The position numbers and the translations under genes were made by a program. From the IMG/VR virus record IMGVR_UViG_3300044645_002359, positions 137,261-201,260 of that record: 64,000 bases of DNA; one strand, given 5' to 3'. The notes under the pieces are model-generated. The model was not told the origin of the DNA and searched no databases. It worked only from the letters and a program-made list of their open reading frames with translations. This document shows positions 44,078-60,689 of the stretch, piece by piece; the first letter of the stretch is position 1; each line of letters begins with the position of its first letter.

Positions 44078-44836
44078 TTAAAAGTCTAGAGCTAGATCTT
44101 CTGGACCCTGCTTTGAGAAAGAACCAAAAAGTTCAGAAGGTGTTTCATAACCTTCGCTCCCTTTTGACCTATTAGCTGAAGCACAGACGAGGGAAAATCT
44201 GGCTTTAGCCTCGTGATACAACTTCCAATCTTTCCACAGAATCTCATCTTTGAATTTCTTGGCAGTAGGTGGCCCAGTTAGAGAAACATCCGTATAGGTT
44301 AAAGAATTTAACTTTATAAAAGAATCGGCAATTTCCGCGAAAGAAAGCCCTACATGGTCAACGTCGGTTCTCATGCCTCTTCGAATGCTCTTTCCTGTCA
44401 AGTAACAAGTTATTGGAAGGTTCAAAGACTCTCTAAAGTCCTTCAACTGAGATGAAACTCCATTCCTCATGGCAGCTTTCACGGCATTGTAATGCTTTTC
44501 TTCTAAACTCGCGCTTGTTGCTATCTTCTTAGCGGGGTACAAAAAGTCTATCAACTTAGCCTTTGGGACGGGTTGCTTCGAGCCCCCTCGCTCAAGGCTT
44601 ATCATTTTAACTTTTCTACCCCCTGCAATTTCTACATTCCTCAAGTAAACATTAACGTCTAGGTCGTTCGACAGTTTCGCCCACGTTGGAGAAAGACGGC
44701 AAGATCTCAGAACGAAGTCTCTGGGCTCACCGACCAACCTTGAATTTGCTCGATGGTTTTCAATTATTCTACTTAGTTTTTCCGTGTAGTCCTTCTTAGT
44801 TAGCCCAAGGGTGTCTTTTCCTATCGTGTTGCTCAT
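44078..44836 (-). CDS. DUF3223/DCL-like, HNH-related protein
   Basis: C.LTG...TDVDH...SF..IA..F...W..YH...A...LVCA.AN.SKG; only clear minus-strand gene in the window. Confidence 0.55.
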   Translation of the reverse strand: MSNTIGKDTLGLTKKDYTEKLSRIIENHRANSRLVGEPRDFVLRSCRLSPTWAKLSNDLDVNVYLRNVEIAGGRKVKMISLERGGSKQPVPKAKLIDFLYPAKKIATSASLEEKHYNAVKAAMRNGVSSQLKDFRESLNLPITCYLTGKSIRRGMRTDVDHVGLSFAEIADSFIKLNSLTYTDVSLTGPPTAKKFKDEILWKDWKLYHEAKARFSLVCASANRSKGSEGYETPSELFGSFSKQGPEDLALDF

Positions 44837-44857
44837 TTCAGTGGGTTGAATCTAATA

Positions 44858-44868
44858 AACTTTACCCG
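44858..44868 (-). promoter_or_regulatory. putative late promoter box on the minus strand
   Basis: Reverse complement CGGGTAAAGTT; GGG 31 nt before ATG 44836. Confidence 0.6.
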
Positions 44869-44911
44869 ACTACAAGGAAGCTAGGATAAGGTCAACGGTA
44901 ATTGACTCAAT

Positions 44912-45286
44912 GTGCTAGAAAAAACTTCGGTTATTCGTCAACGGGGTGACCTGAAATACCTCCTTGGAACTGAAGTTGAGTGCTCGGGGAGGGTAAAAGA
45001 GCTTCGCCCCCACGAAAAGAGAAAAGATCTAGACTCAATTTGTTTAGTGAATGTCATTGTAACACCTTTACCATTCGGTGAATCCATATACGTAGACCAC
45101 TTATGGATTTTGAGGCGCCAATTCAAAAAAGTCGGCAAAGTGCCTGAACAAAATGAAAGAGTGTATTTCACTGGCAAAGTTTACTCCTACAAAAGACTAG
45201 GAGGGAAATCAATCGACCGTGGATTATACGGAATAGAAGATTACGGAGTTCTTCCTTTAATGTTGGGGAAAGTTCATGAAAATTGA
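44912..45286 (+). CDS. hypothetical protein (OB-fold-like)
   Basis: 124 aa; beta-rich, ERVYFTGKVYSY. Confidence 0.5.
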   Translation: MLEKTSVIRQRGDLKYLLGTEVECSGRVKELRPHEKRKDLDSICLVNVIVTPLPFGESIYVDHLWILRRQFKKVGKVPEQNERVYFTGKVYSYKRLGGKSIDRGLYGIEDYGVLPLMLGKVHEN

Positions 45287-45512: not shown

Positions 45513-45525
45513 TCTTCATTAAACA

Positions 45526-46146
45526 GTGAAACCAACAGAGTTAGAGTTTAAAGAACTCAAGCAAAAGTCCTCAGAGTGGGCTGAACAACGACTGTCTGAC
45601 CCTAAAACAGTAGTTATTGACTGTGAAACTACTGGGATCTTAAGAAACGATCCAAATACCGAAATCGTTCAACTTACAGTTACGAACGTTGCAGCCAGGC
45701 CTCTATTTTCAATGTTGATTAAGCCCGCTCAGCCAATGAGAGACGAGCTGGTAAATATCCATGGCATTTCCAACGAGATGGTGATGGATAGTCCCATTTT
45801 CCCTCAGGTAGCGAAGCTAATCTCGTTCATTCTCGAAGGTAAGCACGTTGTCGCATATAACGCTGACTTCGACGTTGCCCTCTTGGTTCATCTATATAAA
45901 AAGTACGACATACCCGCTCCGAAGTTCTCCGGGGCCAGTTGCTGCATGGACAGGTATTCCGAGTGGAAGGGTGAATGGAACGAAGGTAAGGAAGGAATCC
46001 GTTGGCAAAAACTTCCAAACTTGTCAGGTATGCCTGCTCACGACGCACTGTCTGACTGCGTTTCCACTATTCGCGTAATGGAATTAATGGCCAGGGGAAT
46101 TGACTTGGCTACCCTTGATTCTGAAGAAATTTCTCTAAACTTTTGA
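45526..46146 (+). CDS. DEDDh 3'-5' exonuclease (DNA polymerase III epsilon-like)
   Basis: VIDCETTG, IHGI, AYNADFD, HDALSDC. Confidence 0.9.
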   Translation: MKPTELEFKELKQKSSEWAEQRLSDPKTVVIDCETTGILRNDPNTEIVQLTVTNVAARPLFSMLIKPAQPMRDELVNIHGISNEMVMDSPIFPQVAKLISFILEGKHVVAYNADFDVALLVHLYKKYDIPAPKFSGASCCMDRYSEWKGEWNEGKEGIRWQKLPNLSGMPAHDALSDCVSTIRVMELMARGIDLATLDSEEISLNF

Positions 46147-46151
46147 TAACC

Positions 46152-46451
46152 ATGTTCGGTAAAATTACGATCACCTACGAGCCCCCCAACAATGACCCAG
46201 ATGAGAGTAGGGTCTCTATGCAATTTTCTTCAGAGGCAGACCTGAACGAAATTGTAAGGAACTTCGAGCGTTTCCTTCGAGTAATGGAGTACCCTCTAGA
46301 TCAAGGTGATTCTCTCGAGGTTGTTTACGCAAAAGACTGCCCTGACACACCTGCGCACTTCACGGCTTTCCCTAGTCTCGGAAAAAACTGTTACCTCACT
46401 TTGACCGATGGTAGTCTGTATAACCTAACATCAAGAGATTCGGAGAGCTGA
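46152..46451 (+). CDS. hypothetical protein
   Basis: ~99 aa; FS.EADL.EIV..FERFLR.M.Y resembles common small phage proteins. Confidence 0.5.
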   Translation: MFGKITITYEPPNNDPDESRVSMQFSSEADLNEIVRNFERFLRVMEYPLDQGDSLEVVYAKDCPDTPAHFTAFPSLGKNCYLTLTDGSLYNLTSRDSES

Positions 46452-46452
46452 G

Positions 46453-47528: not shown

Positions 47529-47538
47529 TTTACGAAAG

Positions 47539-47579: not shown

Positions 47580-48563
47580 ATGAGTGAAAGTCAACCCGCC
47601 CGCCCCAAACTCGAGTCTTACTTCAAACTTGACAGTGATCCTGCTCCTTTGGTGGTAGTTGACTTTCACGTATACTTACACGATGTGAAAAAGTGGTTCG
47701 AAGAAAAAGTTGAGGGGTCCGTCAGTAAAGAAGTAGAAGACAAATTGATAAAAGGATGTTGGGCCTTGAAGATAAATCGAGGGCCGGATATGCTGCCTAG
47801 GCACGATTACCGTATTGTTGTTGTTGCAGATAGCAGATTTTCGGATACAGGTAATTACTGGCGCGACACTTTCATGAAACGATCTGCAGACGTGCAGTCG
47901 GCTTGGTTAGCTTTTGCGGAAAAAGAGGGGAAAGATCTATCGGAAATCCCAACCCATTACAAGGGCACTCGTGGAGAGAAAACCGAGACGTTTTGGCGCA
48001 TATTCAACATAGGTTGGGACTACGTCAACAAATACTATCCGGTTTTTTCTCAAGAAGGGTTTGAAGCGGACGATGTAGCAGGGGCTATATATCGCCTGTC
48101 TCGCAATAGCCCCCCAGGTTCTGTGGTACGAGAGAGGCAGATTTTGCTTTCAACTTTAGACCGAGATTGGTCTCAATTGGTTGATGAAGACATGAATGTT
48201 TATTTCGCAAACACCCGTGTTCCCTTCCCTAACGAAAAGATTCAGGAAAGATTAGTAGGCAATATAGGGGTTATTGAACATACGAAACATAGGATGGGTT
48301 ACGACCTTGACCACCCGAAGAATTTGGCCGACTGGAAAGTTAAACATGGTGATTCATCTGACAATTTGCCACCAGGCTCTCCAAAATGTCTTTTCGACCT
48401 ATGCGAACCCCATACAGAATACACTATAGAAAGAACTGCTTCCTGGTACCCTCAGCTTGAGGAGTGTTTGAATGACCCCTCTGCCAATATAAAAACTTTT
48501 CACTTTGATCAGGCTTACAAAGAATTCGCTAAAATTAGTATTGACATACCGGTGAGGTTGTAA
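47580..48563 (+). CDS. 5'-3' exonuclease/flap endonuclease (T4 RNase H/T5 FEN-like)
   Basis: VVVDF, YKG.R, GFEADDVAG, STLDRDWSQL, GDSSDNLP. Confidence 0.85.
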   Translation: MSESQPARPKLESYFKLDSDPAPLVVVDFHVYLHDVKKWFEEKVEGSVSKEVEDKLIKGCWALKINRGPDMLPRHDYRIVVVADSRFSDTGNYWRDTFMKRSADVQSAWLAFAEKEGKDLSEIPTHYKGTRGEKTETFWRIFNIGWDYVNKYYPVFSQEGFEADDVAGAIYRLSRNSPPGSVVRERQILLSTLDRDWSQLVDEDMNVYFANTRVPFPNEKIQERLVGNIGVIEHTKHRMGYDLDHPKNLADWKVKHGDSSDNLPPGSPKCLFDLCEPHTEYTIERTASWYPQLEECLNDPSANIKTFHFDQAYKEFAKISIDIPVRL

Positions 48564-48597: not shown

Positions 48598-49269
48598 ATG
48601 CAATCCGACTCTGCCTACTTTGCTCAATGTAATCCGATGGCTCACCTTCTTATTGAAGTGTGTGGCGGAAATGCTGCGGCTATTCCTCAGCATTACCTTG
48701 ATAATTTCCACCATGACTTTGCTGACGGGGATATCTCTCTGGTTCCAGCACTCTCTAAGCTTGATGACGAGGTAGACTTGAGCCCAGAAGAGCTTGATGA
48801 GACCCTGGAAGCATTGCAAAAAGTCAACCCGAACCACTGGCCCGCCGTTGACGTTATAGAAAACATAGACCCACACAGGCTTCTAAATTTATCTGGGGAA
48901 TTTGAAAATCTCTCTGAAAACTTTGTTGAAGACAACCTCGGCACTGCGGAAAAAGTTGAAAGAGTTTTGAAGGGAGTGATTGAAAGTGTTTTCGGAGGTA
49001 CTGTAAACAGTATTCGAGATCCCAAGGGCGAATATCCGTCAAGTTCAAACGACTTTTTACAGGAGGATGACGGTACCTTTTCAGGAACCTTTCAACATGA
49101 AGGCCATCACTTTCGCTTTGAGATAGCTCCCACCGAGCAAGGGTGGATCTGCACTTATCGCATGGAAGAATCCTCTCTCGACAAGATTCCTCAGATTGTG
49201 AAAGATGCGAAGAGGGACAATAAAGAATCTACGAAAGTTAAAAGTGTTCGCAGTCAGGGGTGGAAGTAA
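48598..49269 (+). CDS. acidic hypothetical late protein
   Basis: 223 aa after the late box; contains an HDFAD junction like the 18-28 kb proteins. Confidence 0.55.
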   Translation: MQSDSAYFAQCNPMAHLLIEVCGGNAAAIPQHYLDNFHHDFADGDISLVPALSKLDDEVDLSPEELDETLEALQKVNPNHWPAVDVIENIDPHRLLNLSGEFENLSENFVEDNLGTAEKVERVLKGVIESVFGGTVNSIRDPKGEYPSSSNDFLQEDDGTFSGTFQHEGHHFRFEIAPTEQGWICTYRMEESSLDKIPQIVKDAKRDNKESTKVKSVRSQGWK

Positions 49270-50798
49270 TGGCTTTTTCAGGTTCAATACCTCTTGTTTC
49301 CCTGGGGTCTGGCTCTTTAAGTGGCATAGCCGGGGGGCTAATCAACAACCTAACTTCCTCGGCAATCAGTGTAGCTTTAAGCCCCAGGTTATCTGACCAG
49401 TGGGCGAATTCCTTAGGGCTAAACCCTCAGGCTCTAACAAACTTTGTAGGAACCATTGCGACTCCGGGGCTAATCTCAGCAGGTGGTCAGGCCATCTCTC
49501 AGGCGCTGACCTCTTCGATTGTAAACTCGAAAGCTCTTGGGCCTGCAGGACCCTTGGTCCAAAACTTTGTGACCGGAGCGGCTAACAATTTAACCCAGGG
49601 TTTGCTCGGAAACATTTTTCCGCCAACAACGAGTAGCCCTACGAAATTCTTCCCTGGCGCGGGGAATGAGCCTGAAGCTGATTACCAGGGGTTCACTTAT
49701 AACCTCGGAACCAACGGCCCTGACGTTGTTTTCTCTCTTAAACCCGCTACGACTGGTGCTCAAGCCGAAGTGAAAGACCAAGTCTCTGGAAACGGTCCCG
49801 GCGGTGTTTCAACGTCTATACCAGCTGGTCAGAGTGTTCCGTCATCTAGTGGCGCTCCTGCCTCTTCTATCGGGGACTATTCAAAAGCCTTTCAAAACAC
49901 TTCCAACACATTCCTGACTGACTTAAATCTTCAAGCTATCTCGGCAGGGTCAAGTAGCGGTATTCCGTTCGGTAGTCCGGACGCATTTAAGACTTTGTCT
50001 GCAGTCCCCTTGAACTTAACTTTTTCTGCAGTGGGACAACCTTTCTCTTTAGACACATCTCAAAGTTCAGTTTGGAATTTTATCTGTGCCCCAGAAGAAA
50101 TTTCGTGGTCCACTGCTGCTCAGGTTGATCGGGTTCCAATTTTCGGTACCAACTACCCACCTGTAGTGTCTGGTAGCAGGGGAATGAGAGAGCTGAGCAT
50201 GTCAAATGCCCTGGTTGAGGGGTTCACAAGAGGCAAGACCATCGAAGGGAAAATATCCGACTTAGAAAATCTACTGAACTTCTCTCTTGATACGAAAAAC
50301 GGGTATGTGAAAGTACCCGTGTACTGGATTTACGCGAACAACAAGAGATACGGGGATGTTGACGGCGGTTGTTTCATTATCAAGGAGATGAAAGTTAAAG
50401 AGGAAATGAGAGACTTGACTGGTTTGTCGACTCGTGCCAAAGTAGATATATCTTTTTCTCAGGTTCCTCCATACCAAGTCGACGACGGTAGAGACATAGC
50501 GAGCAAGACAGTGTCGGGAACGACTTCGAGTCTGGGTGCAGTTGCTAACGTTCAGAGAGAAAGACCCATAAACATAGCCCCAACCACTGGAGCTAGTGGC
50601 AGAAGGGGGAGGCAAGGTAGCAGTGTGACGGGTAGTGCTAATCAAGGTGTTTCTCCAACTGTGAAAATACTGGGGGTTCCCACAGGAGCGACTAATGTGA
50701 AAATTGATACGAATAAAAAGGGTGAATCTACGGTTAGATACATATTTAATGGGGTTGAACGTTCGAAGTTGTTACCTAGAGGCACACCACTATTTTAA
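49269..50798 (+). CDS. tail tube initiator / CIS-tube-domain protein
   Basis: FICAPEEISWST.....RVPI.GTN.P.V.SGS.G.RELS...DIS...VP.YQV resembles baseplate-proximal tube initiators. Confidence 0.55.
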   Translation: MAFSGSIPLVSLGSGSLSGIAGGLINNLTSSAISVALSPRLSDQWANSLGLNPQALTNFVGTIATPGLISAGGQAISQALTSSIVNSKALGPAGPLVQNFVTGAANNLTQGLLGNIFPPTTSSPTKFFPGAGNEPEADYQGFTYNLGTNGPDVVFSLKPATTGAQAEVKDQVSGNGPGGVSTSIPAGQSVPSSSGAPASSIGDYSKAFQNTSNTFLTDLNLQAISAGSSSGIPFGSPDAFKTLSAVPLNLTFSAVGQPFSLDTSQSSVWNFICAPEEISWSTAAQVDRVPIFGTNYPPVVSGSRGMRELSMSNALVEGFTRGKTIEGKISDLENLLNFSLDTKNGYVKVPVYWIYANNKRYGDVDGGCFIIKEMKVKEEMRDLTGLSTRAKVDISFSQVPPYQVDDGRDIASKTVSGTTSSLGAVANVQRERPINIAPTTGASGRRGRQGSSVTGSANQGVSPTVKILGVPTGATNVKIDTNKKGESTVRYIFNGVERSKLLPRGTPLF

Positions 50799-50804
50799 CC
50801 CCAC

Positions 50805-50815
50805 GGGGTAAAGTC
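50805..50815 (+). promoter_or_regulatory. putative late promoter box
   Basis: GGGGTAAAGTC; GGG 47 nt before ATG 50853. Confidence 0.55.
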
Positions 50816-50852
50816 TAATTAACACTAGGCTAGTACCGCACGAGAAACGCGA

Positions 50853-53800
50853 ATGGCGGACAATAAAACTTTTACTCTGATCGGTAAATTTGACGATCAG
50901 ATTACCAAAAAGTTAAAAAACCTGAACAAGGAGCTTGAAAAGCTAGGCAAGCCCCTTAAGAATAACAACGCCGCCGCTTCCCTTCGAGATGGGTTTAAGG
51001 CTGCTAACACAGAGCTGAAGAATTTAAGCAAGACTTTTGAAGACCTGAACTCCAGAGTAGGGTTAATTTCAAAACCTATAAATGGAGTCACAAGAAGTTT
51101 GAATGACGCAGCGTCGGCTGCAGGTAAAGTTAGAGACACAGTGTCTCAAATTGGAGAGGGGGTGAAGGGGTTAGACGGGATAACTGAGTCTCTAAGTGAA
51201 GCTGCTCGAATGGCTGGGAGAACGCAGGAGGAGGTAGCCGGGATCGGAGAAGCTGCTGGAAGAGCTACGCGGCAAGCCGAAGATTTGATGACCACTCTCC
51301 TAAAGGCTGACGCCCTAAGCAAGTTCGGGGATGCGATGGCCAGTGGATTTGAGAGAGGGATGAGAACTATGTTAGGAACCGCTCAAAAGGGGGCGGGTCT
51401 GATCTCAAAACTTTTCAAAGAGTCAATGGAGGATGAGCTAGCCGACGTGAAAGCTGCCTCCGGTATTGAAGGATCCTTTAGGCTCAAAGGCTATGAGGGG
51501 TCTTTCAAAGATTCTCAGAAGATGTATAAAAAGTACGATCAAGTTGTGTCGGAAATGATCCGGCAGTCTTCGGCACCTACAGCTAAAGTTGTTGAACTTC
51601 AGAGATATACTTTGGATACGATGGGACCCCTCATGTTGGCTGCAGAGGGGGTGGCCAAGGGTACCAAAATGAAGGACATTGACCCGAAAAAATTAGAGGC
51701 TTCTGCTAAAAACTACGGTGCCTTTCTAGAGAAAGCGGCTCTTTTCTCTCAGGGAACAGGTTCTGCGGGTTTCCGTGTAGCTGCTGGAATTGAGGGTCTA
51801 GTTACCCGAGGGAAGATCGACACAACTATTGACTTCTTCACAGACAACATCATGTTGATGAAGAACCTTGAGGAAGCAGGTTTCATGGGCCGACAAGGTG
51901 GAGGTGGAAGTGGAAAAATGATGAATGCCACTGACGCAGTTAGAATGAAGGCCATGATGGATGCCTTCAATAAATCCATGTCAAGTGAGTCTACCAAAGC
52001 AATGGCTCAGAGTTTAACGGGCTCTCTGCAAGGTCTTCAGGACACTCTCTTCAACCCTTCCGTAGGGATTCTTGGGATGGCTGTAACTTTCACCAAGGAA
52101 GAACAGAAGAAGGCGAATGATTCAATCATTAAGATACAAAATGCACGTATAGACAGATACCGTTGGGATCTGAAAAACGAGGCAGCGGATTCCCGAAGAG
52201 CTAAGCAACTTAGGGCTAATATTGAGCAAGCTCAGCTTACAAGAGACCAGCTGACGAAAGATGGAGCAGATGAGATTAGTACCCCCTTCAAGGCATTCAG
52301 CTACGCATTTTCTAACTTAGTGAGAAGTCTAACTGACGCCTTAAACTCCATAGGACCAGTTTGGACGAATTTCGCATTGGCCGCAATAGAAGTCACAAAC
52401 ACGGTGTTTGGGCCGCTATCGGGAACATTGAGTGCTGTGGCTTCTAACATGAGGTCAAAAGACCCTTCAAATAAAATGACTCAAGCTGAAGGATTTGGCA
52501 GAATTGTGGGGGAAATTTTCAAGACTGTAGGGCAAATCATGGGTGATCTTGCAAATATGATAAAAGACCCCAATAGCGCATTGGGGAAGGCTCAAAGTGA
52601 ATTTATGAAGGGTTTCATGTCTGCATTCACAGGACCTGGCTCCTTAGACGCGGCTAAGAAAGGCATAGAAAGTGGAATATCTGCCTTTGTAGGGAAACTC
52701 TTTGAGTTTATTTTCAAAGTGATAACTTATGAGCCAATCAGACCCTTAGTTTTAACCTTCATTGGTGCCATATTCGGTCCCCCCCTTATAAGTGCCGTGA
52801 TATCCTCTGCAACTCCCTTAATAGCGAGTGCCATTTTTAAGGCAGTTTCAGGTTCCTTAGTGGCCTCAACTTCAGGGTCTGTTGCGGGTGCTGGAGCAGG
52901 TGCAGCTGGCGCGGCGGCGGCGGCAGGTGCCGGGGGATTACTGGCGTCAGTCTTAGGTGTCACTGCAATAATTGCTTTATTAGTAGCAGCATTTGTTATC
53001 TTTGAAGGACCCCTGAGAGCATTAGCAGACTGGTTAACAGACACTGGCATTAAACTAACCGAAAGTAGTAACTGGGCTGCATCTGCCGCAGGGTATTTCT
53101 TAAAAGGTCTAGCTAATGTTTTAAGAGGGCTCACAGACTTTTTTACTGGAATTTGGGACATTTTAGTAGGGATGTTCACAGCTGACCAAGAGAAGATAGT
53201 CCAAGGCGTTCGGAAAATTTTCTGGGGTATTGGAGAAGTTTTAAGGGGGGTTGTACAAAGCATATTGGGAATGGGAGGAATTATCGTTGGTGCAATCGGT
53301 AATTTGTTTAACGCTATAGGTCGTATCATCGAAAGTATGATACCTGGAAATAGCGCAGCTGCTTCAGGCCAGGGCAGGAAAACTTCCGACTGGGGTTCCA
53401 GTGGAACCCCGCAGAGAAGATCAACTGCGGCGGCTCCTAAGACATCTTTAAATCTTTACGGTGGCGCAGGCCCCCAAATGACTTCTTCTTTGGGATCTTC
53501 CGTAGAAGAGTCAAGTAAAAAACTTCAGTCTTATAGCCAAGTTGTGGGCATGACTGTAAAAGAGTCTCAAAACAACTTGTCGGTTTCAAGAAGTCTCTCT
53601 CAACAACAAGCAGTAGTGACCCAAAAAATGACTGCAGCGTGGGAAAAAACGAATACAACCTCTCAAGGAAATTTATTGTCCTCTGCTACAGACTTATCAA
53701 AGTCTATCACCTCTGCATCATTCAAAATAAATCAAGCAAGTTCCTCAGTGAAGGCTAATTCTAGCCCCCTGGCTGCTCCTGCAGTTCGTGGCTTCCTGCC

Positions 53801-54602
53801 AGGGTCTTCCAACAATAAAATGTCTTTAGACGAAGCTCTCTCTTCTGAGATGCGGAATAAACCGTCCGGCTCTCATCTTGTTATTGCAAATTCAACTGAA
53901 ACAGTTATACCTGCTGCCCAAGGGTACACTCCTGCGTCTGGGGGACCTCTCCCGATGCTTGGTGCGGCACTTTCTAAGTATGTCGGACCCCTGAACAAGC
54001 TTGGTGAGATGGCCGATGGGCTCAGGAAACTTAGAGAAAGCTCCATGCTCTTCGGAGGTGGCTCCGGAAGTCTATTGGGGGCCAAGTCTCTAGCAGCAAT
54101 GTTCGGTCTCAGTTTAACTTCATTCATTCGACCCCATTCTGTTGGATCCTATCACCAAACAGGAAGGGCTATGGACTTTTCAAATAGCAGTGGTCCCACT
54201 CCTCAAATGATGGCATTTGCGAGAGAGATGATTAAGCGGTATGGCAGTTCTTTAACAGAACTTATTTACACACCGTTAGGCTTCAGTGTTAAAAATGGAA
54301 GAAAAGTAGCCCCTCTGGCAGCGGCTGGCCACTATAACCACGTTCACGTGGCTTACGCCTTAGGGCAAGGTAGCCCTGCGTTTTTCTCTAATCAAAATGA
54401 AGCTATGGCTTGGGAGCGAAAGATGATGCCTCCCTCCGCAAAAGTGGCGTCATTCACAGCGAACACCTCAGAAGGGTTCGGCCACTCAACTATTAACGCC
54501 CCAATCACGATTTATCAACAACCGAACCAAGACCCGGAAGAACTTGCTTCTATGGTAGCAATGAGAATTGGTATGGTCGTAGACGAACTCAGGAACCACT
54601 AA
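50853..54602 (+). CDS. tape measure protein with C-terminal M15-like peptidase domain
   Basis: 1249 aa helical, Ala/Gly/Leu-rich with hydrophobic repeats; YHQTGRAMD (H-x6-D) and HYNHVH. Confidence 0.75.
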   Translation: MADNKTFTLIGKFDDQITKKLKNLNKELEKLGKPLKNNNAAASLRDGFKAANTELKNLSKTFEDLNSRVGLISKPINGVTRSLNDAASAAGKVRDTVSQIGEGVKGLDGITESLSEAARMAGRTQEEVAGIGEAAGRATRQAEDLMTTLLKADALSKFGDAMASGFERGMRTMLGTAQKGAGLISKLFKESMEDELADVKAASGIEGSFRLKGYEGSFKDSQKMYKKYDQVVSEMIRQSSAPTAKVVELQRYTLDTMGPLMLAAEGVAKGTKMKDIDPKKLEASAKNYGAFLEKAALFSQGTGSAGFRVAAGIEGLVTRGKIDTTIDFFTDNIMLMKNLEEAGFMGRQGGGGSGKMMNATDAVRMKAMMDAFNKSMSSESTKAMAQSLTGSLQGLQDTLFNPSVGILGMAVTFTKEEQKKANDSIIKIQNARIDRYRWDLKNEAADSRRAKQLRANIEQAQLTRDQLTKDGADEISTPFKAFSYAFSNLVRSLTDALNSIGPVWTNFALAAIEVTNTVFGPLSGTLSAVASNMRSKDPSNKMTQAEGFGRIVGEIFKTVGQIMGDLANMIKDPNSALGKAQSEFMKGFMSAFTGPGSLDAAKKGIESGISAFVGKLFEFIFKVITYEPIRPLVLTFIGAIFGPPLISAVISSATPLIASAIFKAVSGSLVASTSGSVAGAGAGAAGAAAAAGAGGLLASVLGVTAIIALLVAAFVIFEGPLRALADWLTDTGIKLTESSNWAASAAGYFLKGLANVLRGLTDFFTGIWDILVGMFTADQEKIVQGVRKIFWGIGEVLRGVVQSILGMGGIIVGAIGNLFNAIGRIIESMIPGNSAAASGQGRKTSDWGSSGTPQRRSTAAAPKTSLNLYGGAGPQMTSSLGSSVEESSKKLQSYSQVVGMTVKESQNNLSVSRSLSQQQAVVTQKMTAAWEKTNTTSQGNLLSSATDLSKSITSASFKINQASSSVKANSSPLAAPAVRGFLPGSSNNKMSLDEALSSEMRNKPSGSHLVIANSTETVIPAAQGYTPASGGPLPMLGAALSKYVGPLNKLGEMADGLRKLRESSMLFGGGSGSLLGAKSLAAMFGLSLTSFIRPHSVGSYHQTGRAMDFSNSSGPTPQMMAFAREMIKRYGSSLTELIYTPLGFSVKNGRKVAPLAAAGHYNHVHVAYALGQGSPAFFSNQNEAMAWERKMMPPSAKVASFTANTSEGFGHSTINAPITIYQQPNQDPEELASMVAMRIGMVVDELRNH

Positions 54603-54603
54603 T

Positions 54604-56211
54604 ATGGCAAACAGCTTAATAATCCCACGCTGCGAAGTTGTCTGGGGAGACGTGAACCTCATGAATTACAACTTCGACGGTAGTACACCAGGGTTGACAA
54701 ACCAACCCCTAGTCTACGATGTAAGAGTATCTTTGCAAGATTCCGGCCAAACACCCACAGGTTCCATGCGTTGGAACCCAACCGGTGTGGCTTTCAGAGT
54801 TTATGAGAAATTGATAGAAACTGCAATCAACAAGACCATCACTGTTAGGTATTACTACCTAAACGGTCGTTCTATTACTTTCTCGTTCGTGTGGTCTGGG
54901 CAAACAGAGGTTTACGGAAAAGAGATGTCTCTTGAAGTGAAACTTGCCTCTGAACTCGACGGTCTTGTGAATGCGAACATAAAGAGCACAGCACAAGCCA
55001 GTGACCAAGGCTCTTCACCTTTAACCAACCTATCGCAGTTGAACTACACGTTCGGTGTTGATAAGTATGACCTGGTGAAAATAACGCCCCAGACACAGGA
55101 AAACTTGAAAACAACCAAAGTTCTTTCAAATTACTCAGAAGGAACCAACTATCTTGACAGTGTGAAAAACTTATTTGAGCAGACAGGCAGTATAGTTATG
55201 GCGTCTAATATTGTTTCTCCGGGGGGAACACAAAAATTGTCAGCAAACTGCGTTGTATTGGGACCCTACCTATCGGATAGTAAAACAGTAGAGGAACTTC
55301 CCGCACAGAGTCAATTCCCCGACCCATCAGTAAGGTACGGATACTTTCTCGGCCCAGGCATCATAAATACAATTACAAAAACGTCTGAATGGCAGCCACC
55401 CCAAAAAACACAAACTAGCTTAGACAGCATTCAAGCTAAGGTTCAGGCTACCGACCCTGGAACGCAGGGGCAACCTACGCCGACTACACCACAAAGCCAA
55501 CAAGCTGCCGCTGCGGCTCAGTCTCAAAACAGAAGCGGGGCTGGGAACACTGCTAATTCCCGTGCGAGGCCCGGAGTTCGATTGAAGGATAACCAAGATG
55601 GGGAAAAAAGAAAGCTAGAATTGCAGCAAGAGCGAGGGTCTAAACTAAGTGCTTCCTTATTTATGTGCCCTTCCCTCACAGGTATTAAACCAAGCGATGT
55701 TGTTTTCATTCCAAACTTCAGCGGAACTTACATAGAAGACTGGATTGTCAACGGAATTGAATACGCGCAGACTGACGGCGGTGTTGAAGTTTCCCTTCAG
55801 GCTAGCAGACAGTACGGACTGGGCAATTTGATGAACAAAAGACTCGGCGATGAATGGTTAGGAAAAGCTAAAGCCAAGAATTTGGTTGGATCTACTGGAA
55901 CTCTTGAGGGATGGCACGAATACGCTTGGGGATCACTGGGCTTCAATAAGCCGGTTGAATCCTCGCAAACGGCCGCTACAACAGGCGGTTCTCAAACGGC
56001 AGTTACAGCGGGAAATTCCCCAACAGTTTCGGATTCTTTTTCACAGTTGGCAAAACCTTTTGGAACTTCCCAAACTTTGATAACAGATAAAGCCCTTTAT
56101 GATTACTTGACTAAATACTTGAATGTGAAAGCTGTGAATGGAAGCGGAGTTATAGACCTCCCTATCGACAAAGTAAGGCAGTTAAACCAACTTCGTTTAG
56201 AGGATCGCTAA
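54604..56211 (+). CDS. baseplate hub protein (gp27/gp44/gpD-like)
   Basis: Follows the tape measure; P.L.GIKPSDVVFI....G.YI..WIV..IEY.Q..GG...SL.A C-terminal hub pattern. Confidence 0.6.
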   Translation: MANSLIIPRCEVVWGDVNLMNYNFDGSTPGLTNQPLVYDVRVSLQDSGQTPTGSMRWNPTGVAFRVYEKLIETAINKTITVRYYYLNGRSITFSFVWSGQTEVYGKEMSLEVKLASELDGLVNANIKSTAQASDQGSSPLTNLSQLNYTFGVDKYDLVKITPQTQENLKTTKVLSNYSEGTNYLDSVKNLFEQTGSIVMASNIVSPGGTQKLSANCVVLGPYLSDSKTVEELPAQSQFPDPSVRYGYFLGPGIINTITKTSEWQPPQKTQTSLDSIQAKVQATDPGTQGQPTPTTPQSQQAAAAAQSQNRSGAGNTANSRARPGVRLKDNQDGEKRKLELQQERGSKLSASLFMCPSLTGIKPSDVVFIPNFSGTYIEDWIVNGIEYAQTDGGVEVSLQASRQYGLGNLMNKRLGDEWLGKAKAKNLVGSTGTLEGWHEYAWGSLGFNKPVESSQTAATTGGSQTAVTAGNSPTVSDSFSQLAKPFGTSQTLITDKALYDYLTKYLNVKAVNGSGVIDLPIDKVRQLNQLRLEDR

Positions 56212-56299: not shown

Positions 56300-57271
56300 A
56301 TGGCTGTAATTACATTCAAAATCCTGCCCCAACTTGATGACAAGAACCGCGCTCGGCTTGAGTCGAAGAGTTATACAAGGGCATACACGGACATTCCGAA
56401 CAAAGCACTCCCTGAGACTTATCGCAACGGTTTGTCCACAGTCTTCAAGGTCCTAACCGGCGAAGACTTCGACCCTGAAGGGTCTACCTTCACCGTAAAG
56501 GCAGACGCCAACGGAACTTTCCAACGTTTGTATTCTCCTACAATCTTCTCAACTGAAGAAGGCGGTTTGGTGATCCGTTGGGGCGACCGCGACATCCCCC
56601 TCCTTGTAGCTCCCGGTAAAATCGGCGTAGCGAATGCACCGAAGGGCACCAAGTTCGCGTTCAAAGATGAGCAAATCGGTAAGTATACTGAGCCCGTTCT
56701 TTCTGTGTCTGCACAGGGAGAGGGAACTCTTTACACCCTGCCTATCACAATTCGCAAGAAGGAAATCAAGGAAGAACTTCCCGCCGACCTTCTTGAACTT
56801 CTGCTCGACGAAAACCCTGAAGCAATCGCTGAAAAGGTTTACGCCGCACCAGACATTACGAAGCGCGGTGAAAGCTCCGGTGGAGAGCGTCTGATCGGTC
56901 CTTTCCTAAAGGTCGCTAGCTTGCCCCTAGGTGAGTACACAATCACCAGCTACAGGGTCAAAGAAGGCGGAGCCTATGGAACCGACTACTTTCTCCAAGC
57001 GAAAGTGACTGAGCCTTTCGTGGCTCCAGTTCGCACTCAAGTTGACGGAGAATGGATTGACCAAGAAACCGAAATCTCTGACTGGGTTATCGTCAAGCCG
57101 AACGGGGCAATGAAAAAAATTCTCGCCGCCGAACCCTTGATTACTCCTGATGCCCCAGCAACTTTGAAAGTTAACGAGCACTATGAGTACAACGGCAACC
57201 CTGCGGCGAAAGTTACCTTGAAGTGTCCGAACTTCGTTCAAAATCCCGAGAGCTTCGACCTGGACTTTTGA
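56300..57271 (+). CDS. highly expressed replication-region protein, possibly ssDNA-binding
   Basis: C-ending codon bias like the capsid gene, beta-rich, acidic-aromatic tail ESFDLDF, adjacent to the helicase; function inferred. Confidence 0.45.
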   Translation: MAVITFKILPQLDDKNRARLESKSYTRAYTDIPNKALPETYRNGLSTVFKVLTGEDFDPEGSTFTVKADANGTFQRLYSPTIFSTEEGGLVIRWGDRDIPLLVAPGKIGVANAPKGTKFAFKDEQIGKYTEPVLSVSAQGEGTLYTLPITIRKKEIKEELPADLLELLLDENPEAIAEKVYAAPDITKRGESSGGERLIGPFLKVASLPLGEYTITSYRVKEGGAYGTDYFLQAKVTEPFVAPVRTQVDGEWIDQETEISDWVIVKPNGAMKKILAAEPLITPDAPATLKVNEHYEYNGNPAAKVTLKCPNFVQNPESFDLDF

Positions 57272-57340: not shown

Positions 57341-57372
57341 ACATCGTCAAACCCTAAACAACAAGAGGCTAT

Positions 57373-59397
57373 ATGGCAGATCCCTTTTCTGGGGGACTCG
57401 GAAGTACGAAACAGGAAATTGGTATCCTAAACGAAGCCCGAGAAAGAAACAAAGCAACTTCCTTTCGCTCGAAGAAAGACGGAGAGGAAAAACAAGAAAA
57501 GAAGAAAAAAGCGCCAACGAGAGTATCAGAGCTTTACAATGCGGGTATTACCCTTCTGAAGGCGAAAGGTTTTACCGTAGAAATTGACGAAAATGGTGAC
57601 CACTGTTTACACAGAATATTGAAGCCCTCGCCTCCGCAAATGGTTCGAGGCATTCGTTATCCTGCAGACTTTAACCCCTTACAAGACATCTCTGTCTACG
57701 ATGACTTTGAGCGTGTAGAAACATGCTTTCATCCTGACTTGTGTCCAGACGAAGTGAGAACATTCTGGGAACCTTTATACAGCCCTAAGGCGGGAGATTC
57801 ACCTCTTCTTTCTTTCAGCGAAAGGTTATTGAAGATGAGAAAAGTTAACCAGAGTAAAAACCTTAGTGAAACTTTAGATTACGGTCATACTTTTGATCCT
57901 GCGGGTAGGTTCGGTGGGGAGCCAGTAATGAACCCTCGTGTGTGGGTGCCAGATAGAGAATGGTTTGACCCCGCTTTGCATAAAGTATCAATTAGAGACG
58001 TATTTACTATCTTCCCTGAAGCCGAGTGTGAGATGCTTAAGCTTATCATGGGCCGCATAGGGGTTGGTAGAACAGATCATCTTCCGCCAGGTAGAAAAGA
58101 CAAAGTAGATCACACTGCTCGTATGGCGGGAGTGATCGTGGGTAAAGATCCAGGATTAGGGAAGAGCACCATCTTCAATGGCATGACTGCTGCTTTCTCT
58201 AAGTGCGGTTTCATCACCCATTCTTTCAAGTCAACAGAAGACCGGTTCGGTCTAAAGAAAGTCGCGTTGAGCGACATCGCTTACAAAGATGATACGGCAC
58301 TCCCTTCCTTGAAAAAATTCTTGGCCGCAGAAGAAACAAAGATCCTGATCACCGGGGGTATCTTCACAGTTGAGGACAAGTTTCGAAACTCAGAGGAAGT
58401 TTGGCCAAAAACTGTACTTCTTCTAAATGCCAATGACTGGAATAGCAAATTCGCCTATGATTTGGATCCCGGAATCATTGATAGGATCAAGCTAATTAGT
58501 ACTTACAGAGAATATGAAGTTGCTAAAAATAGGGAAAACTTAGAAGGAACAGTTTGTGAGGGTACCCCTGACCTAAGACCCCGTGCCCACATTCCCTACT
58601 TGGCCAATAAACTTGGCGTTAGCAAAGATGCTTTATACTTGTGGTGCCTTCGTCTAGCAACGGATCGCTTCTGGGAAGTTATCCAAGACACCTCAGACCC
58701 AAGCATAAACAGACTTCAGGTGGAAGTTCGCTACTGGACCACACGTCAACGGATTCGCTTCAAGGCAGACGTTACTCAGGCTCTCGTGAACGCGATGGCG
58801 TTCGCTCACTCTGTGAGGACGCAATCAGAGTGGGATTTCATGCCTGAAATGACACCGGACGTTCTTTATGATTATCTACAATCTCTTTACTTCGTAGGAG
58901 TAGACCCCTCTTGCCAACACCTGACAGCTCGAATGAAGAGGGAGTGGGAGCTTGCAGGAAGAACTTCAACCCACTACTATCAAGGTTTCCGAGAGTTGAG
59001 ATGGGAGTCTGTTAAAAAGGCAATTTCTCTTGCTAAGGAAAGCCTGTTCGACGATACAACCGGGCTTCGAAAAGAAACCAAAGATAAAACCGCTCTTACA
59101 CTCATCCGAGAAATCATGGAGAAATTGGTGATGAGAGACGGCTTCAAGATTGGGGGCGAAGCGAACTACGTCATCGAGAATTGGAACAACTGCCGCCACG
59201 CGCAAGAAGAGCTTGTGGTTGAGGGCAGAAAGTTGGTCGGATTCATGGAAGATATCGACAAGGAAAGATTGCTCAACCCGAAAGCAGTATGTTTTGATGA
59301 TTGGCTTCTCGATAAGCACTATTCTCCTGACCGTGCAGAGAAGTTCCGAGACTCCGCTCGTAAAAAACTCTATGAAAGTAAGGGGGTAAAAGTATGA
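57373..59397 (+). CDS. SF3 (D5/NrS-1-like) DNA helicase
   Basis: IVGKDPGLGKS Walker A, IAYKDD Walker B, LLLNAN motif C, DRIKLI. Confidence 0.75.
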   Translation: MADPFSGGLGSTKQEIGILNEARERNKATSFRSKKDGEEKQEKKKKAPTRVSELYNAGITLLKAKGFTVEIDENGDHCLHRILKPSPPQMVRGIRYPADFNPLQDISVYDDFERVETCFHPDLCPDEVRTFWEPLYSPKAGDSPLLSFSERLLKMRKVNQSKNLSETLDYGHTFDPAGRFGGEPVMNPRVWVPDREWFDPALHKVSIRDVFTIFPEAECEMLKLIMGRIGVGRTDHLPPGRKDKVDHTARMAGVIVGKDPGLGKSTIFNGMTAAFSKCGFITHSFKSTEDRFGLKKVALSDIAYKDDTALPSLKKFLAAEETKILITGGIFTVEDKFRNSEEVWPKTVLLLNANDWNSKFAYDLDPGIIDRIKLISTYREYEVAKNRENLEGTVCEGTPDLRPRAHIPYLANKLGVSKDALYLWCLRLATDRFWEVIQDTSDPSINRLQVEVRYWTTRQRIRFKADVTQALVNAMAFAHSVRTQSEWDFMPEMTPDVLYDYLQSLYFVGVDPSCQHLTARMKREWELAGRTSTHYYQGFRELRWESVKKAISLAKESLFDDTTGLRKETKDKTALTLIREIMEKLVMRDGFKIGGEANYVIENWNNCRHAQEELVVEGRKLVGFMEDIDKERLLNPKAVCFDDWLLDKHYSPDRAEKFRDSARKKLYESKGVKV

Positions 59398-59774
59398 ACA
59401 TACAAACCCCAGAACAAATTCTCGTGGATTCATTTACTTACGAATGTCAAAAACAACTGCGACTCAAGGAACAACTTGAATCCGAAGGGTTTATTCTGGC
59501 AGATGATCCCGCTGGGTTATACGATATGATTGGAACAGTTCAAGAACTGAATTGTTTCTGTGAGTTATACACTCCTCGACTTCTTGTGAAAACTTTCGTG
59601 GAAGGAACCGAGCACATCGATTACGCTTTCCACTTAGTTTCTTTGTGGCAAATTGTAAAATTCGGCTACTTGATCCCGGAACCCGGACAATACTTTGCAA
59701 CAAGGTATATTATCGGTGTTCGCAAAGTTAGCGAAAATTCTTTCGTCCCCTCACTGCGTTTGCCCCTCAACTGA
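59394..59774 (+). CDS. hypothetical protein
   Basis: 126 aa, ATGA-coupled. Confidence 0.55.
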   Translation: MNIQTPEQILVDSFTYECQKQLRLKEQLESEGFILADDPAGLYDMIGTVQELNCFCELYTPRLLVKTFVEGTEHIDYAFHLVSLWQIVKFGYLIPEPGQYFATRYIIGVRKVSENSFVPSLRLPLN

Positions 59775-60229
59775 TGAACGGACTTTTCCAAAATCCGGAA
59801 GATTCACAGCCCGACCTGCCCACCCCGATTAATTCTCAGGGTGGGTATGGTAACGGGTCGGGTTCCTTTAGCTTGAAACGTTCTCTCAAGCGCAAAGTGA
59901 AATCTAGAGAAGACCTTTCTCAACCGAAAGAAAAAACCTTCGCGGAAGCTAACCCCCTTAGAACAACTTCCGGATCGGAAAATAACGCTGTCGACCGGTA
60001 CTTCGGTGCCTTCAGCATTGAGTCTAAGAGGCACGTTTGGGACCTTCTTAGCAAGCACCCTCAGTTCGGAGACGAAGGGGGTTTACGAAAAAACCGCATC
60101 CGCAATAATACAACGGAAGTGCTCCCCAACGATCCTTTCCGAAATGTCACGAACGGTGGCTATGTAGTTTACGAACATCCTGAACCAAATGGCACAAACT
60201 TACAAAGACCCTCACAGCTACCTGAATGA
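59774..60229 (+). CDS. hypothetical protein
   Basis: 151 aa, TGATG-coupled. Confidence 0.5.
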   Translation: MNGLFQNPEDSQPDLPTPINSQGGYGNGSGSFSLKRSLKRKVKSREDLSQPKEKTFAEANPLRTTSGSENNAVDRYFGAFSIESKRHVWDLLSKHPQFGDEGGLRKNRIRNNTTEVLPNDPFRNVTNGGYVVYEHPEPNGTNLQRPSQLPE

Positions 60230-60689
60230 AAGCCTTGTAAAAAGAGGGAAGTCCGGTCACCAAGAAGTTTATTTAACCCACGTTACGGTAGTTGCTGAAG
60301 CTGAAGCTGACTACGGTTATCGAGTTTCACCTCAAAAGTTCGACTTTTTCGCCCCTTTAGGTAATTATTACAATAGTCCAGAATGGTTGATTCTACTTGT
60401 ATCTCTGCGGTCACAGGGCACCGATACCCAAAGAACGATCACTTTTGATCAAACAACTTTTCAGTTCCTGCCAGAGGGCAGTCATCTGAGCCTAAACATT
60501 TTCTTTCCTGAAAGGAACGTAGAAACGTTTGACTACGACGTCCTTGCAGCTCAAGACATGCTAAGAGAAGTTGCAAAATTTGCTGGGAAAATCCCCACAA
60601 CCATCCGTTTCAACTTGGGGCTTGTAAAAAAGTCTTATGAAACCATGGTTGAAGATGGAGAGGTTGAAGAAGTAGAATTCAGCTTTTAA
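60189..60689 (+). CDS. hypothetical protein
   Basis: 166 aa ending EEVEFSF. Confidence 0.55.
   Translation: MAQTYKDPHSYLNESLVKRGKSGHQEVYLTHVTVVAEAEADYGYRVSPQKFDFFAPLGNYYNSPEWLILLVSLRSQGTDTQRTITFDQTTFQFLPEGSHLSLNIFFPERNVETFDYDVLAAQDMLREVAKFAGKIPTTIRFNLGLVKKSYETMVEDGEVEEVEFSF

What the first reader, a model, noticed from the sequence alone, without database searches (positions are those of the whole stretch)
44078..60689. Common C-terminal tail E-x-hydrophobic-x-[LF]-x-F on DNA-acting proteins: candidate clamp or hub docking motif
The extreme C-termini are EDLALDF (DUF3223-like nuclease, 44078), EEISLNF (DEDDh exonuclease, 45526), ESFDLDF (putative SSB, 56300) and EEVEFSF (60189). The proteins are unrelated. 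T4 gp43, gp33 and gp55 are known to share a C-terminal [ST]LDFL-type clamp-binding peptide, and bacterial SSB tails end in DDIPF. This suggests one replisome hub, phage or host, recruiting several enzymes.
Basis: partly seen in the sequence, partly recalled or inferred. Interest (0 to 1): 0.6.

Follow-up and report, generated by a model that had tools for sequence, protein, structure and literature searches.

The report
Shared docking tail on cyanophage replication proteins
Three unrelated DNA-handling proteins of this cyanophage (its probable single-strand DNA-binding protein, a 3'-5' exonuclease and an HNH-like nuclease) end in the same strictly conserved eight-residue tail, which looks like a docking peptide for one shared replication partner that could not be identified here.

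Summary
The window is the last 64 kb of a 201-kb cyanophage contig related to Synechococcus phage S-CBWM1. The 323-aa OB-fold protein, the DEDDh exonuclease and the 252-aa protein all end in [PS]-[DE]-x-Φ-x-L-[DN]-F-COOH. The 252-aa protein is HNH-like, not DUF3223. The strict motif occurs three times at C-termini and never internally in 61,893 residues. It is kept in every orthologue examined: 120 and 120 database homologues, about 25 viral contigs, and S-CBWM1. In the OB-fold family the tail is ancestral. It is present in S-TIM5 and A-HIS2, and in 63 of 128 full-length representatives at 50% clustering, plus 18 more with 1-3 extra residues. That family always sits in a FEN / primase-helicase / Pol-gamma-like replication module, and these phages encode no other SSB. 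The best reading is a family-specific SSB tail tip that two nucleases in this lineage have copied, so that all three dock on one site. That site is probably a phage replisome protein, as with T7 gp2.5 and gp4 on the polymerase. The host beta clamp remains a rival: the hydrophobic spacing fits, but the defining Gln is absent. No phage clamp or clamp loader exists. The fourth tail (166-aa protein) looks like a terminal beta-strand, not the same motif. The hub is unidentified.

The parts
56300..57271 (+). Probable phage single-strand DNA-binding protein (323 aa, phrog_25892, no Pfam family). It has two beta-rich domains; the C-terminal domain (res 209-311) is an OB-type barrel.
   Evidence: AF2 model pLDDT 85. 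VIA-align Z 4-6 to OB folds, including several bacterial SSBs. Foldseek prob 0.87-0.96 to a small SSB, 4dam. BFVD hits beyond its own family are mostly phage SSBs/DUF669. No PF00436 or PF10991 SSB elsewhere in these phages. Conserved position next to the primase-helicase.
57245..57268 (+). Tail tip PESFDLDF-COOH of the SSB-like protein
   Evidence: Residues 318-323 have pLDDT <50, i.e. flexible. [DE]-[SA]-F-x-L-[DESAN]-F holds in 119/120 homologues. S-TIM5 gp096 ends EEDLNLDF at 25% identity. Family-wide consensus is [DE][DE]x[LI]DL[DN]F.
45526..46146 (+). Stand-alone DEDDh (DnaQ/RNase T-like) 3'-5' exonuclease, 206 aa
   Evidence: PF00929 E 7e-18, residues 29-184; phrog_192. The D-x-E, D and H-x4-D motifs are visible in the translation.
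46120..46143 (+). Tail tip SEEISLNF-COOH of the exonuclease, about 8 residues after the last helix of the domain
   Evidence: Orthologues end EISLNF / EVSLDF / EISLDF / DIDLDF / DIALDF / EINLDF (S-CBWM1, 43% id). A variant with a 17-residue in-frame deletion still ends VIDLNF. Homologous exonucleases of phages 186, VP882 and P2559S lack it.
44078..44836 (-). 252-aa protein with an HNH-like (beta-beta-alpha-metal) nuclease domain in residues ~114-231; N-terminal half poorly modelled
   Evidence: No Pfam/PHROG/PDB sequence hit. AF2 pLDDT ~90 for residues 110-225. Best structural match is phage T5 SciA endonuclease, Z 5.7 over 92 residues, followed by the GVE2 and Gme HNH endonucleases, Z 3.8 and 3.1. 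Invariant D158, D160-H161, H208 and N222-R-S-K-G226. Support is modest.
44081..44104 (-). Tail tip PEDLALDF-COOH of the HNH-like protein, after a ~14-residue low-confidence linker
   Evidence: P-[ED]-x-[LVMI]-[SA]-L-D-F in 120/120 homologues. S-CBWM1 gp123 ends DGDISLDF.
60189..60689 (+). 166-aa protein of unknown function ending EEVEFSF; probably not the same motif
   Evidence: Orthologue ends are EVEFSF / EIEFSY / EIEYAY / EVDVGF / EVEVGW / EIEIEY, with no indels in the last 60 columns. No family or Atlas lead. Absent from S-CBWM1.
57373..59397 (+). Primase-helicase (674 aa), candidate acceptor of the tails; adjacent to the SSB-like gene
   Evidence: phrog_25243 'DNA primase' E 8e-126; PF19263 DUF5906. 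The same adjacency is seen in S-CBWM1, L181 and L183. Its own C-terminus has no motif.
47580..48563 (+). Flap endonuclease / 5'-3' exonuclease (327 aa), a conserved member of the same replication module and a candidate acceptor
   Evidence: PF02739. FEN lies upstream of the SSB-like gene in A-HIS1, A-HIS2, L181 and L183.

Best explanation
The tails are a genuine short linear docking motif, [PS]-[DE]-x-Φ-x-L-[DN]-F with a free carboxylate, at the end of a short flexible linker. Its original owner is a previously undescribed two-domain OB-fold protein. That protein is the probable SSB of the cyanophage replication module built around a mitochondrial-type (Pol gamma-like) family-A polymerase, a DUF5906 primase-helicase and a flap endonuclease. 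In the S-CBWM1-like lineage to which this phage belongs, the DEDDh 3'-5' exonuclease and an HNH-like endonuclease have acquired the same tip. Inferred mechanism: the terminal Phe and its carboxylate, Leu(-2) and the hydrophobic residue at -4 lie on one face of an extended peptide. They insert into a hydrophobic groove with a basic rim on one acceptor protein, and the flanking acidic residues add electrostatic steering. Because SSB and the two nucleases carry the same tip, they share or compete for one site, so the nucleases are delivered to, or exchanged with SSB at, the place where SSB hands over single-stranded DNA. The most likely acceptor is a phage replisome protein: the Pol gamma-like polymerase or the primase-helicase, less likely FEN. 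This follows the T7 precedent, where the SSB gp2.5 and the helicase-primase gp4 both end in acidic ...DF-COOH tails that bind the family-A polymerase. Shown here: the motif, its conservation, its convergence on three unrelated folds, its flexibility, the module context, and the absence of a phage clamp. Inferred: that it docks, and on what.
For: Motif and statistics. Conservation in orthologues and in 240 database homologues, with alternating conserved and free positions. Deep conservation in the SSB-like family: S-TIM5 gp096 ...EEDLNLDF and A-HIS2 ...DDLDLDF; 63 of 128 full-length representatives at 50% clustering end Φ-x-Φ-x-[FW], and 18 more carry it with 1-3 extra residues. A few distant members end instead in the canonical bacterial SSB tip ...DIPF (P0337, P0395), so this position is used as an SSB tip. 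SSB identity: OB fold and no other SSB in these genomes. Module co-occurrence of FEN, SSB-like, DUF5906 primase-helicase and Pol gamma-like in A-HIS2 and unrelated contigs; the shared module is noted in PMC7156551. The host Cyanobium SSB tips are different (EEEVPF, DDDIPF), so the phage tip is orthogonal to the host SSB interactome. T7 gp2.5 ends ...EDGDF and gp4 ends ...NDTDF; their tails bind the polymerase (PMC12339929). The tails are disordered in the models.
Against: No binding was demonstrated or predicted. The acceptor is inferred from co-occurrence and analogy only. T7 tails are long and poly-acidic and lack the Leu(-2)/Φ(-4) pattern, so the chemistry here is closer to groove-binding peptides such as clamp-binding motifs. 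The primase-helicase of this phage does not carry the tail, unlike T7 gp4. SSB function of the OB-fold protein rests on weak structural scores (Z 4-6) and on context. All phages concerned infect bacteria that have a beta clamp, so co-occurrence cannot exclude a host acceptor.
Confidence: 0.5

Rival explanations
1. The tails are clamp-binding motifs for the host beta sliding clamp (DnaN). The phage has no clamp of its own and tethers its SSB, a proofreading-type exonuclease and a nuclease to host clamps left on DNA.
For: The hexapeptide x-Φ-x-L-x-F has the hydrophobic spacing of the QLxLxL/F class (Hda QLSLPL and Pol IV QLVLGL, from my own knowledge). In the exonuclease the motif lies at the extreme C-terminus just after the DEDDh domain, like E. 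coli epsilon's motif and the C-terminal Q[Y/L]ALF of mycobacterial DnaQ (PMC11348249; PMC3664792). Nucleases such as NucS also use C-terminal clamp motifs (PMC11109965). No phage clamp or loader was found. A phage protein is known to use the host clamp (Mu MuC, PMC12867686).
Against: The defining Gln at position 1 is absent: 0 of 240 close homologues and 1 of 63 family representatives. An SSB docking on a clamp has no precedent that I know of. Pol gamma/T7-type family-A replisomes do not use clamps. The tail is ancestral in the SSB, not in the nucleases.
Confidence: 0.2
2. The acceptor is the SSB-like protein itself. The tip binds the OB-fold DNA groove in cis or of a neighbour, giving auto-inhibition or cooperativity as in T7 gp2.5 and E. 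coli SSB. The nucleases use the same tip to ride on SSB.
For: Tail-to-OB binding is established for T7 gp2.5 and E. coli SSB (my own knowledge). It would explain why SSB and its clients share one peptide. The family-wide conservation of the tip goes with the conserved OB core.
Against: In the AF2 model the tail is not docked on the core and has pLDDT 35-53. If the tip occupies the ssDNA groove, nucleases would bind only DNA-free SSB, which is an odd way to recruit them.
Confidence: 0.12
3. The tip mimics the host SSB C-terminal tip, either to capture host SSB-interacting proteins or to block them.
For: Acidic residues followed by a hydrophobic residue at -2 and a terminal Phe, as in host tips ...EEEVPF and ...DDDIPF. 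A few distant family members do end in ...DIPF.
Against: The penultimate Pro that defines bacterial tips is replaced by Asp/Asn in nearly all members (P at -1 in 1 of 63). The extra conserved hydrophobic residue at -4 is absent from host tips. The existence of separate DIPF-ending members suggests the two tips are alternatives with different partners.
Confidence: 0.08
4. There is no common partner. The similar ends are independent features: structural strands, stability or degradation signals.
For: This is probably true of the 166-aa protein. No partner has been shown.
Against: Three unrelated folds share an eight-residue pattern, including Pro/Ser at -7. It is kept through 45-75% sequence divergence and through an in-frame deletion. 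It always sits at the free C-terminus after a low-confidence linker, and it is confined to replication proteins in four genomes.
Confidence: 0.07

Closest known systems
T7 replisome: acidic C-terminal tails of gp2.5 (SSB) and gp4 (helicase-primase) binding the family-A polymerase gp5
   Same: An SSB and other replication enzymes share a C-terminal tail ending ...D-F-COOH (T7...EDGDF...NDTDF). The polymerase is family A. There is no clamp. The terminal Phe is essential in T7 (PMC12339929 and papers cited there).
   Different: T7 tails are about 20 residues with more than 10 acidic residues and no conserved Leu(-2)/Φ(-4). Here there are only 2-4 acidic residues and a strict hydrophobic i, i+2, i+4 pattern. 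Here the clients are nucleases rather than the helicase-primase. The SSB folds are not detectably related by sequence.
Bacterial SSB C-terminal tip (D-D-D-I/L-P-F) and its interactome
   Same: An OB-fold protein, a flexible linker, and an acidic-hydrophobic tip with a terminal Phe and free carboxylate. A few members of this phage family carry the canonical DIPF tip at the same place.
   Different: There is no Pro at -1 and there is an extra conserved hydrophobic residue at -4. In bacteria only SSB carries the tip and the nucleases carry the pocket; here the nucleases carry the tip too.
Bacterial beta-clamp-binding motifs (QL[SD]LF, QLxLxL), including the epsilon/DnaQ motifs
   Same: A hydrophobic 2-4-6 pattern, often at the extreme C-terminus, shared by many unrelated DNA enzymes including DEDDh exonucleases and nucleases. 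One hub serves many clients.
   Different: Position 1 is Asp/Glu/Ser/Ala, never Gln. The motif is strongly acidic. The founding carrier is an SSB.
T4 gp45 clamp-binding epitopes of gp43, gp33 and gp55
   Same: [quoted passage not shown] Some family members end ...SLDFLN or ...LDLSFLG, reminiscent of the T4 epitope as I recall it.
   Different: No gp45-like clamp or clamp loader is encoded in this phage or its complete relatives.

Membership tests
Bacterial beta-clamp-binding motif (QL[SD]LF / QLxLxL) | Gln at motif position 1 | tested here: not met
   Position -5 is D/E/S/A/T/C in 240 homologues. Q occurs in 1 of 63 motif-bearing representatives.
Bacterial beta-clamp-binding motif (QL[SD]LF / QLxLxL) | Hydrophobic residues at positions 2, 4 and 6 (or 2, 4, 5) | tested here: met
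   -4 is L/I/V/F/M, -2 is L and 0 is F, nearly invariant.
Bacterial beta-clamp-binding motif (QL[SD]LF / QLxLxL) | Binds the hydrophobic cleft of DnaN | tested here: inconclusive
   The single complex job (Cyanobium DnaN dimer + residues 219-252 of the 252-aa protein) returned 'no answer'. This is evidence neither for nor against.
Bacterial SSB C-terminal tip (DDD[IL]PF) | Acidic run followed by a hydrophobic residue, then terminal Phe with free carboxylate, at the end of a disordered tail after an OB fold | tested here: met
   Tail ...NPESFDLDF with pLDDT <50 for residues 318-323; OB-type domain at 209-311.
Bacterial SSB C-terminal tip (DDD[IL]PF) | Pro at the penultimate position | tested here: not met
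   -1 is D/N/S/E/A. Host Cyanobium SSBs end VPF/IPF.
Pfam SSB (PF00436) / gp2.5-Enc34 type (PF10991) | Sequence match to the family model | tested here: not met
   No Pfam hit for the 323-aa protein even at E<=10. No genome-wide hit. The resemblance is structural only.
T7-type acidic tail system | SSB and another replisome enzyme both end ...D-F-COOH, and a family-A polymerase is present | tested here: met
   Pol gamma-like polymerase at G000 118547-121483 (PF18136 + PF00476).
T7-type acidic tail system | Long poly-acidic tail (about 20 residues) | tested here: not met
   Only 2-4 acidic residues in the last 10, and the linker is about 8-14 residues.
T7-type acidic tail system | The tail binds the polymerase | not testable with these tools
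This needs peptide binding assays or multimer modelling with alignments.
T4 gp45 clamp-binding epitope | A phage-encoded gp45-type clamp and clamp loader are present | tested here: not met
   PF09116, PF02916, PF13177 and TIGR00663 are all blank in G000, G001 (98% complete), S-CBWM1, S-TIM5 and A-HIS1.
DEDDh exonuclease (RNase_T, PF00929) | Family model match and catalytic D-E-D-D-h residues | tested here: met
   E 7e-18 over 29-184. DCE, NADFD and HDALSD are visible.
HNH endonuclease (252-aa protein) | Beta-beta-alpha-metal fold with a D/H-H...N...H signature | tested here: inconclusive
   No Pfam HNH hit. Best fold match is T5 SciA at Z 5.7, with two HNH enzymes at Z 3-4. Invariant D160-H161, H208 and N222-x-x-K-G.
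   No hit at E<=10.

The most novel reading that the evidence does not exclude
A private docking code of the cyanophage Pol-gamma-type replisome. A new SSB family carries its own tip peptide (Φ-D-L-D-F-COOH), orthogonal to the host SSB tip. The tip is read by a pocket on the phage polymerase or primase-helicase, and phage nucleases have copied it to gain access to the fork. This would be the first SSB-tip system in which clients carry the tip rather than the pocket. Because mitochondrial Pol gamma is the closest relative of these polymerases, it could show how an ancestral Pol-gamma replisome was wired.
Probability: 0.35. Interest if true: 0.75.

Novelty: new variant of a known kind. Interest (0 to 1): 0.55.

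Why it matters
The replication machinery of Pol-gamma-type cyanophages (S-TIM5, S-CBWM1, A-HIS1/2, Mic1 and many uncultured freshwater and marine relatives) is uncharacterised. The literature I found lists the polymerase, FEN, helicase and primase as the shared replication components and does not mention an SSB (PMC7156551). This work points to the probable SSB, gives it a diagnostic C-terminal signature, and supplies a short peptide that can serve directly as bait to pull out the hub of that replisome. Two nucleases have converged on the same peptide. That is a clean natural example of linear-motif spread inside a phage genome and gives three independent handles on one binding site. If the acceptor is instead the host clamp, this would be a Gln-less clamp motif carried by an SSB, which would also be new.

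Tried and rejected
(1) Complex prediction of the Cyanobium DnaN dimer with the last 34 residues of the 252-aa protein returned 'no answer' (score 0.19, below the mark, controls not run). It is not used as evidence either way.
(2) A phage-encoded clamp or loader was searched with four families in five genomes; nothing was found.
(3) I tried to define a cyanobacterial clamp-motif consensus from host DnaQ-like and UmuC-like proteins of three Cyanobium-type genomes. No obvious motif was readable, so the attempt was uninformative.
(4) Sequence searches for the 252-aa, 323-aa and 166-aa proteins against Pfam, PHROGs and PDB sequences gave nothing usable. Foldseek against PDB gave nothing for the 252-aa model. 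ESM Atlas feature searches gave only chance-level leads; the nearest named cluster for the 323-aa protein was Phi29 SSB at 0.78.
(5) I looked for other tail-bearing candidates. The S-CBWM1 246-aa protein ending VVALDY is structural and its G000 orthologue lacks the ending, so this is chance. The G000 protein ending GLGFKF is not acidic, though that ending recurs in G001 (GLGFKF) and S-CBWM1 (GLGYRF); it was not followed up.
(6) Ideas considered from memory and dropped:
- The eukaryotic RNR R2 tail (FTLDADF-like) binding R1. S-CBWM1's own NrdB ends ...AMDYSL, so its R1 is tuned to a different peptide.
- PDZ class II ligands (Φ-x-Φ-COOH). Bacterial PDZ proteases are extracytoplasmic.
- TPR/EEVD-type carboxylate clamps and C-terminal degrons. 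There is no supporting feature.
(7) The reads tools, other genetic codes and metagenome scans were not needed and were not used.

Full report
WHAT THE WINDOW IS. The window is the last 64 kb of a 201,260-bp linear viral contig (IMG/VR type, about 71% complete). Gene content and order match Synechococcus phage S-CBWM1 (Aokuangvirus): tail genes are followed by a nucleotide-metabolism and replication block. Many uncultured relatives exist, including a 277-kb, 98%-complete contig, G001. The replicative polymerase lies outside the window at G000 118547-121483. It is a mitochondrial-type family-A enzyme with its own exonuclease domain (PF18136 + PF00476). The same type is known from S-TIM5, A-HIS1/2, S-CBWM1 and Mic1 (PMC7156551).

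THE OBSERVATION. Genome-wide, among 343 crude ORFs, 15 end in Phe. The pattern [DE]x[LIVMF]x[LF]xF is C-terminal four times against 0.09 expected (P about 3e-6). I chose that pattern after seeing the data. The stricter [DE]x[LIVMF]xL[DN]F occurs three times at C-termini and nowhere internally in 61,893 residues. In G001 (525 ORFs), S-CBWM1 (207) and S-TIM5 (201), the motif sits only on the same protein families.

CONSERVATION. S-CBWM1 orthologues are 43-55% identical and end DGDISLDF (gp123), LDEINLDF (gp126) and DGALDLAF (gp135). About 25 viral contigs keep the tails. In 120 database homologues of each of two families the last eight residues are:
- P-[ED]-x-[LVMI]-[SA]-L-D-F for the 252-aa protein
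- P-[ED]-[SA]-F-x-L-[DSEAN]-F for the 323-aa protein
Positions -4, -2 and 0 are essentially invariant and -3 is free. This i, i+2, i+4 pattern, on three unrelated folds and always at the free C-terminus, is the signature of an extended peptide that lies in a groove. An exonuclease variant with a 17-residue in-frame deletion still ends VIDLNF. One relative has even gained ...ENVALDF on the small protein downstream of the exonuclease. Homologous DnaQ-like exonucleases of phages 186, VP882 and P2559S have no such tail.

The 166-aa protein is different. Its end varies as EVEFSF / EIEFSY / EVDVGF / EVEVGW / EIEIEY, with no indels before it and a strand-like alternation. I read it as a terminal beta-strand and drop it from the motif.

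WHAT THE CARRIERS ARE.
(a) 45526-46146 is a DEDDh exonuclease (PF00929; phrog_192). The motif follows about 8 residues after the last helix.
(b) 44078-44836(-) has no Pfam, PHROG or PDB sequence match and no DUF3223 match.
- Its AF2 model is confident only for residues ~110-225.
- That part is closest to the phage T5 SciA endonuclease (Z 5.7, 92 residues), with two HNH endonucleases further down.
- It has invariant D-x-D-H, H208 and N-R-S-K-G. I call it HNH-like with modest confidence.
(c) 56300-57271 has no Pfam family (phrog_25892, unknown function).
- Its AF2 model (pLDDT 85) has two beta-rich domains and a disordered tail.
- The C-terminal domain is an OB-type barrel with weak, recurrent similarity to bacterial and phage SSBs.
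- None of the five phage genomes has a PF00436 or PF10991 SSB.

THE KEY NEW RESULT. A profile search of the 323-aa family against 1.84 billion representatives found 180 members. Of 128 full-length ones, 63 end Φ-x-Φ-x-[FW], with consensus [DE][DE]x[LI]-D-L-[DN]-F. Another 18 carry the same motif followed by 1-3 residues (LDLSFLG, SLDFLN). A few end in the canonical bacterial SSB tip ...DIPF. Members include S-TIM5 gp096 (...EEDLNLDF, 25% identity), A-HIS2 (...DDLDLDF) and A-HIS1 (...DDLLSGW).

Wherever context could be read, the gene lies in the order FEN - small ORF - SSB-like - DUF5906 primase-helicase ... Pol gamma-like polymerase. In those distant phages it is the only protein with the tail. 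So the tail is the ancestral tip of this SSB-like family. The exonuclease and the HNH-like protein acquired it within the S-CBWM1-like lineage.

WHAT THE ACCEPTOR COULD BE.
- A phage clamp is out. DnaN, both gp45 domains and clamp-loader AAA+ models find nothing in the five genomes, while the controls ring.
- The host clamp fits the hydrophobic spacing. It also fits the precedent of DEDDh exonucleases and nucleases with C-terminal clamp motifs (PMC11348249, PMC3664792, PMC11109965). But the defining Gln is absent, and an SSB client would be unprecedented.
- Host SSB-tip mimicry is unlikely. Cyanobium SSBs end ...EEEVPF and ...DDDIPF, and the phage tip has Asp/Asn where the Pro should be.
- The T7 system is the only known case in which an SSB shares its tail with another replisome enzyme. 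gp2.5 ends ...EDGDF and gp4 ends ...NDTDF, and both bind the family-A polymerase (PMC12339929).

Given the strict co-occurrence with a family-A polymerase and a primase-helicase, I favour a phage replisome protein as acceptor (about 0.5). The host clamp is next (about 0.2), then the SSB core itself (about 0.1).

MECHANISM (inferred). Phe(0) with its carboxylate, Leu(-2) and Φ(-4) occupy a hydrophobic groove with a basic rim, and the acidic residues at -1, -5 and -6 steer the peptide. SSB bound to ssDNA presents many tips. The nucleases, carrying the same tip, reach the same site or compete with SSB for it. That would place a 3'-5' exonuclease and a nicking or cleaving HNH enzyme at the fork or at recombination and repair intermediates.

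NOVELTY AND SCORE. The kinds are known: SSB tips, T7 tails and clamp motifs. The specific motif, the SSB-like family that carries it, and its spread to two nucleases are, as far as the searched literature shows, undescribed. I rate it a new variant of a known kind, interest 0.55. The finding is solid as an observation and immediately testable with peptides, but the hub is unresolved.

LIMITS.
- ORF sets were crude (longest ORFs, minimal overlap).
- The structural similarities are weak (Z < 6).
- The clamp-motif and T4-epitope sequences quoted without a call number come from my own memory.

Noticed in passing
window 47580-48563 (C-terminus ~48520-48560): The flap endonuclease has its own conserved C-terminal segment: [QE]F[AS]K[IV]x[LI][DE]xP[VTI][RK][LV] (IDIPVRL here; QFAKICLEPPVRL and QFAKVGLDSPTRL in relatives). 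It differs from the acidic ...LDF tip and could be a second docking peptide or simply the last helix.
   Followed up: partly
window 48598-56211: Four large genes (223, 512, 1249 and 535 aa) sit between FEN and the SSB-like gene. The 1249-aa one weakly resembles tape-measure proteins; S-CBWM1 annotates the equivalents as tape measure and 'rare lipoprotein A'. They split a replication module that is contiguous in A-HIS1/2 and other relatives.
   Followed up: no
L180 (A-HIS2) 13464-14063: The RNase_T-like exonuclease of A-HIS2 ends ...NASEDLDLS, i.e. the SSB-type tip (its SSB ends ...DDLDLDF) without the final Phe. It may be a decayed or nascent copy of the motif.
   Followed up: no
L026 480-794 (orthologue of window 46143-46451): In one relative the small protein just downstream of the exonuclease ends ...GMENVALDF, while its orthologues in other contigs do not. 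This looks like a lineage-specific gain of the tip on a fourth protein.
   Followed up: partly
proteins P0337, P0395, P0306: Distant members of the SSB-like family end in the canonical bacterial SSB tip (...GIPF...DIPF...DIPY) instead of ...LDF. This suggests tip swapping between phage-specific and host-type partners.
   Followed up: no
window 40001-44000: GC content rises to 0.52 against about 0.46 elsewhere, over the genes 41798-44006 just upstream of the HNH-like gene. S-CBWM1 has a glycosyltransferase at the equivalent place.
   Followed up: no
G000:C1 114681-116696 and 110987-112069 (outside the window): The phage encodes a GyrA/ParC-like topoisomerase subunit (PF00521) next to the polymerase, and a DUF1517 protein, a family I recall as typical of cyanobacteria and plastids.
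   Followed up: no
window 5779-8616: A 945-aa protein in the tail-gene block ends ...EEGCFDFE, superficially like the motif but with an extra terminal Glu. I took it to be chance.
   Followed up: no
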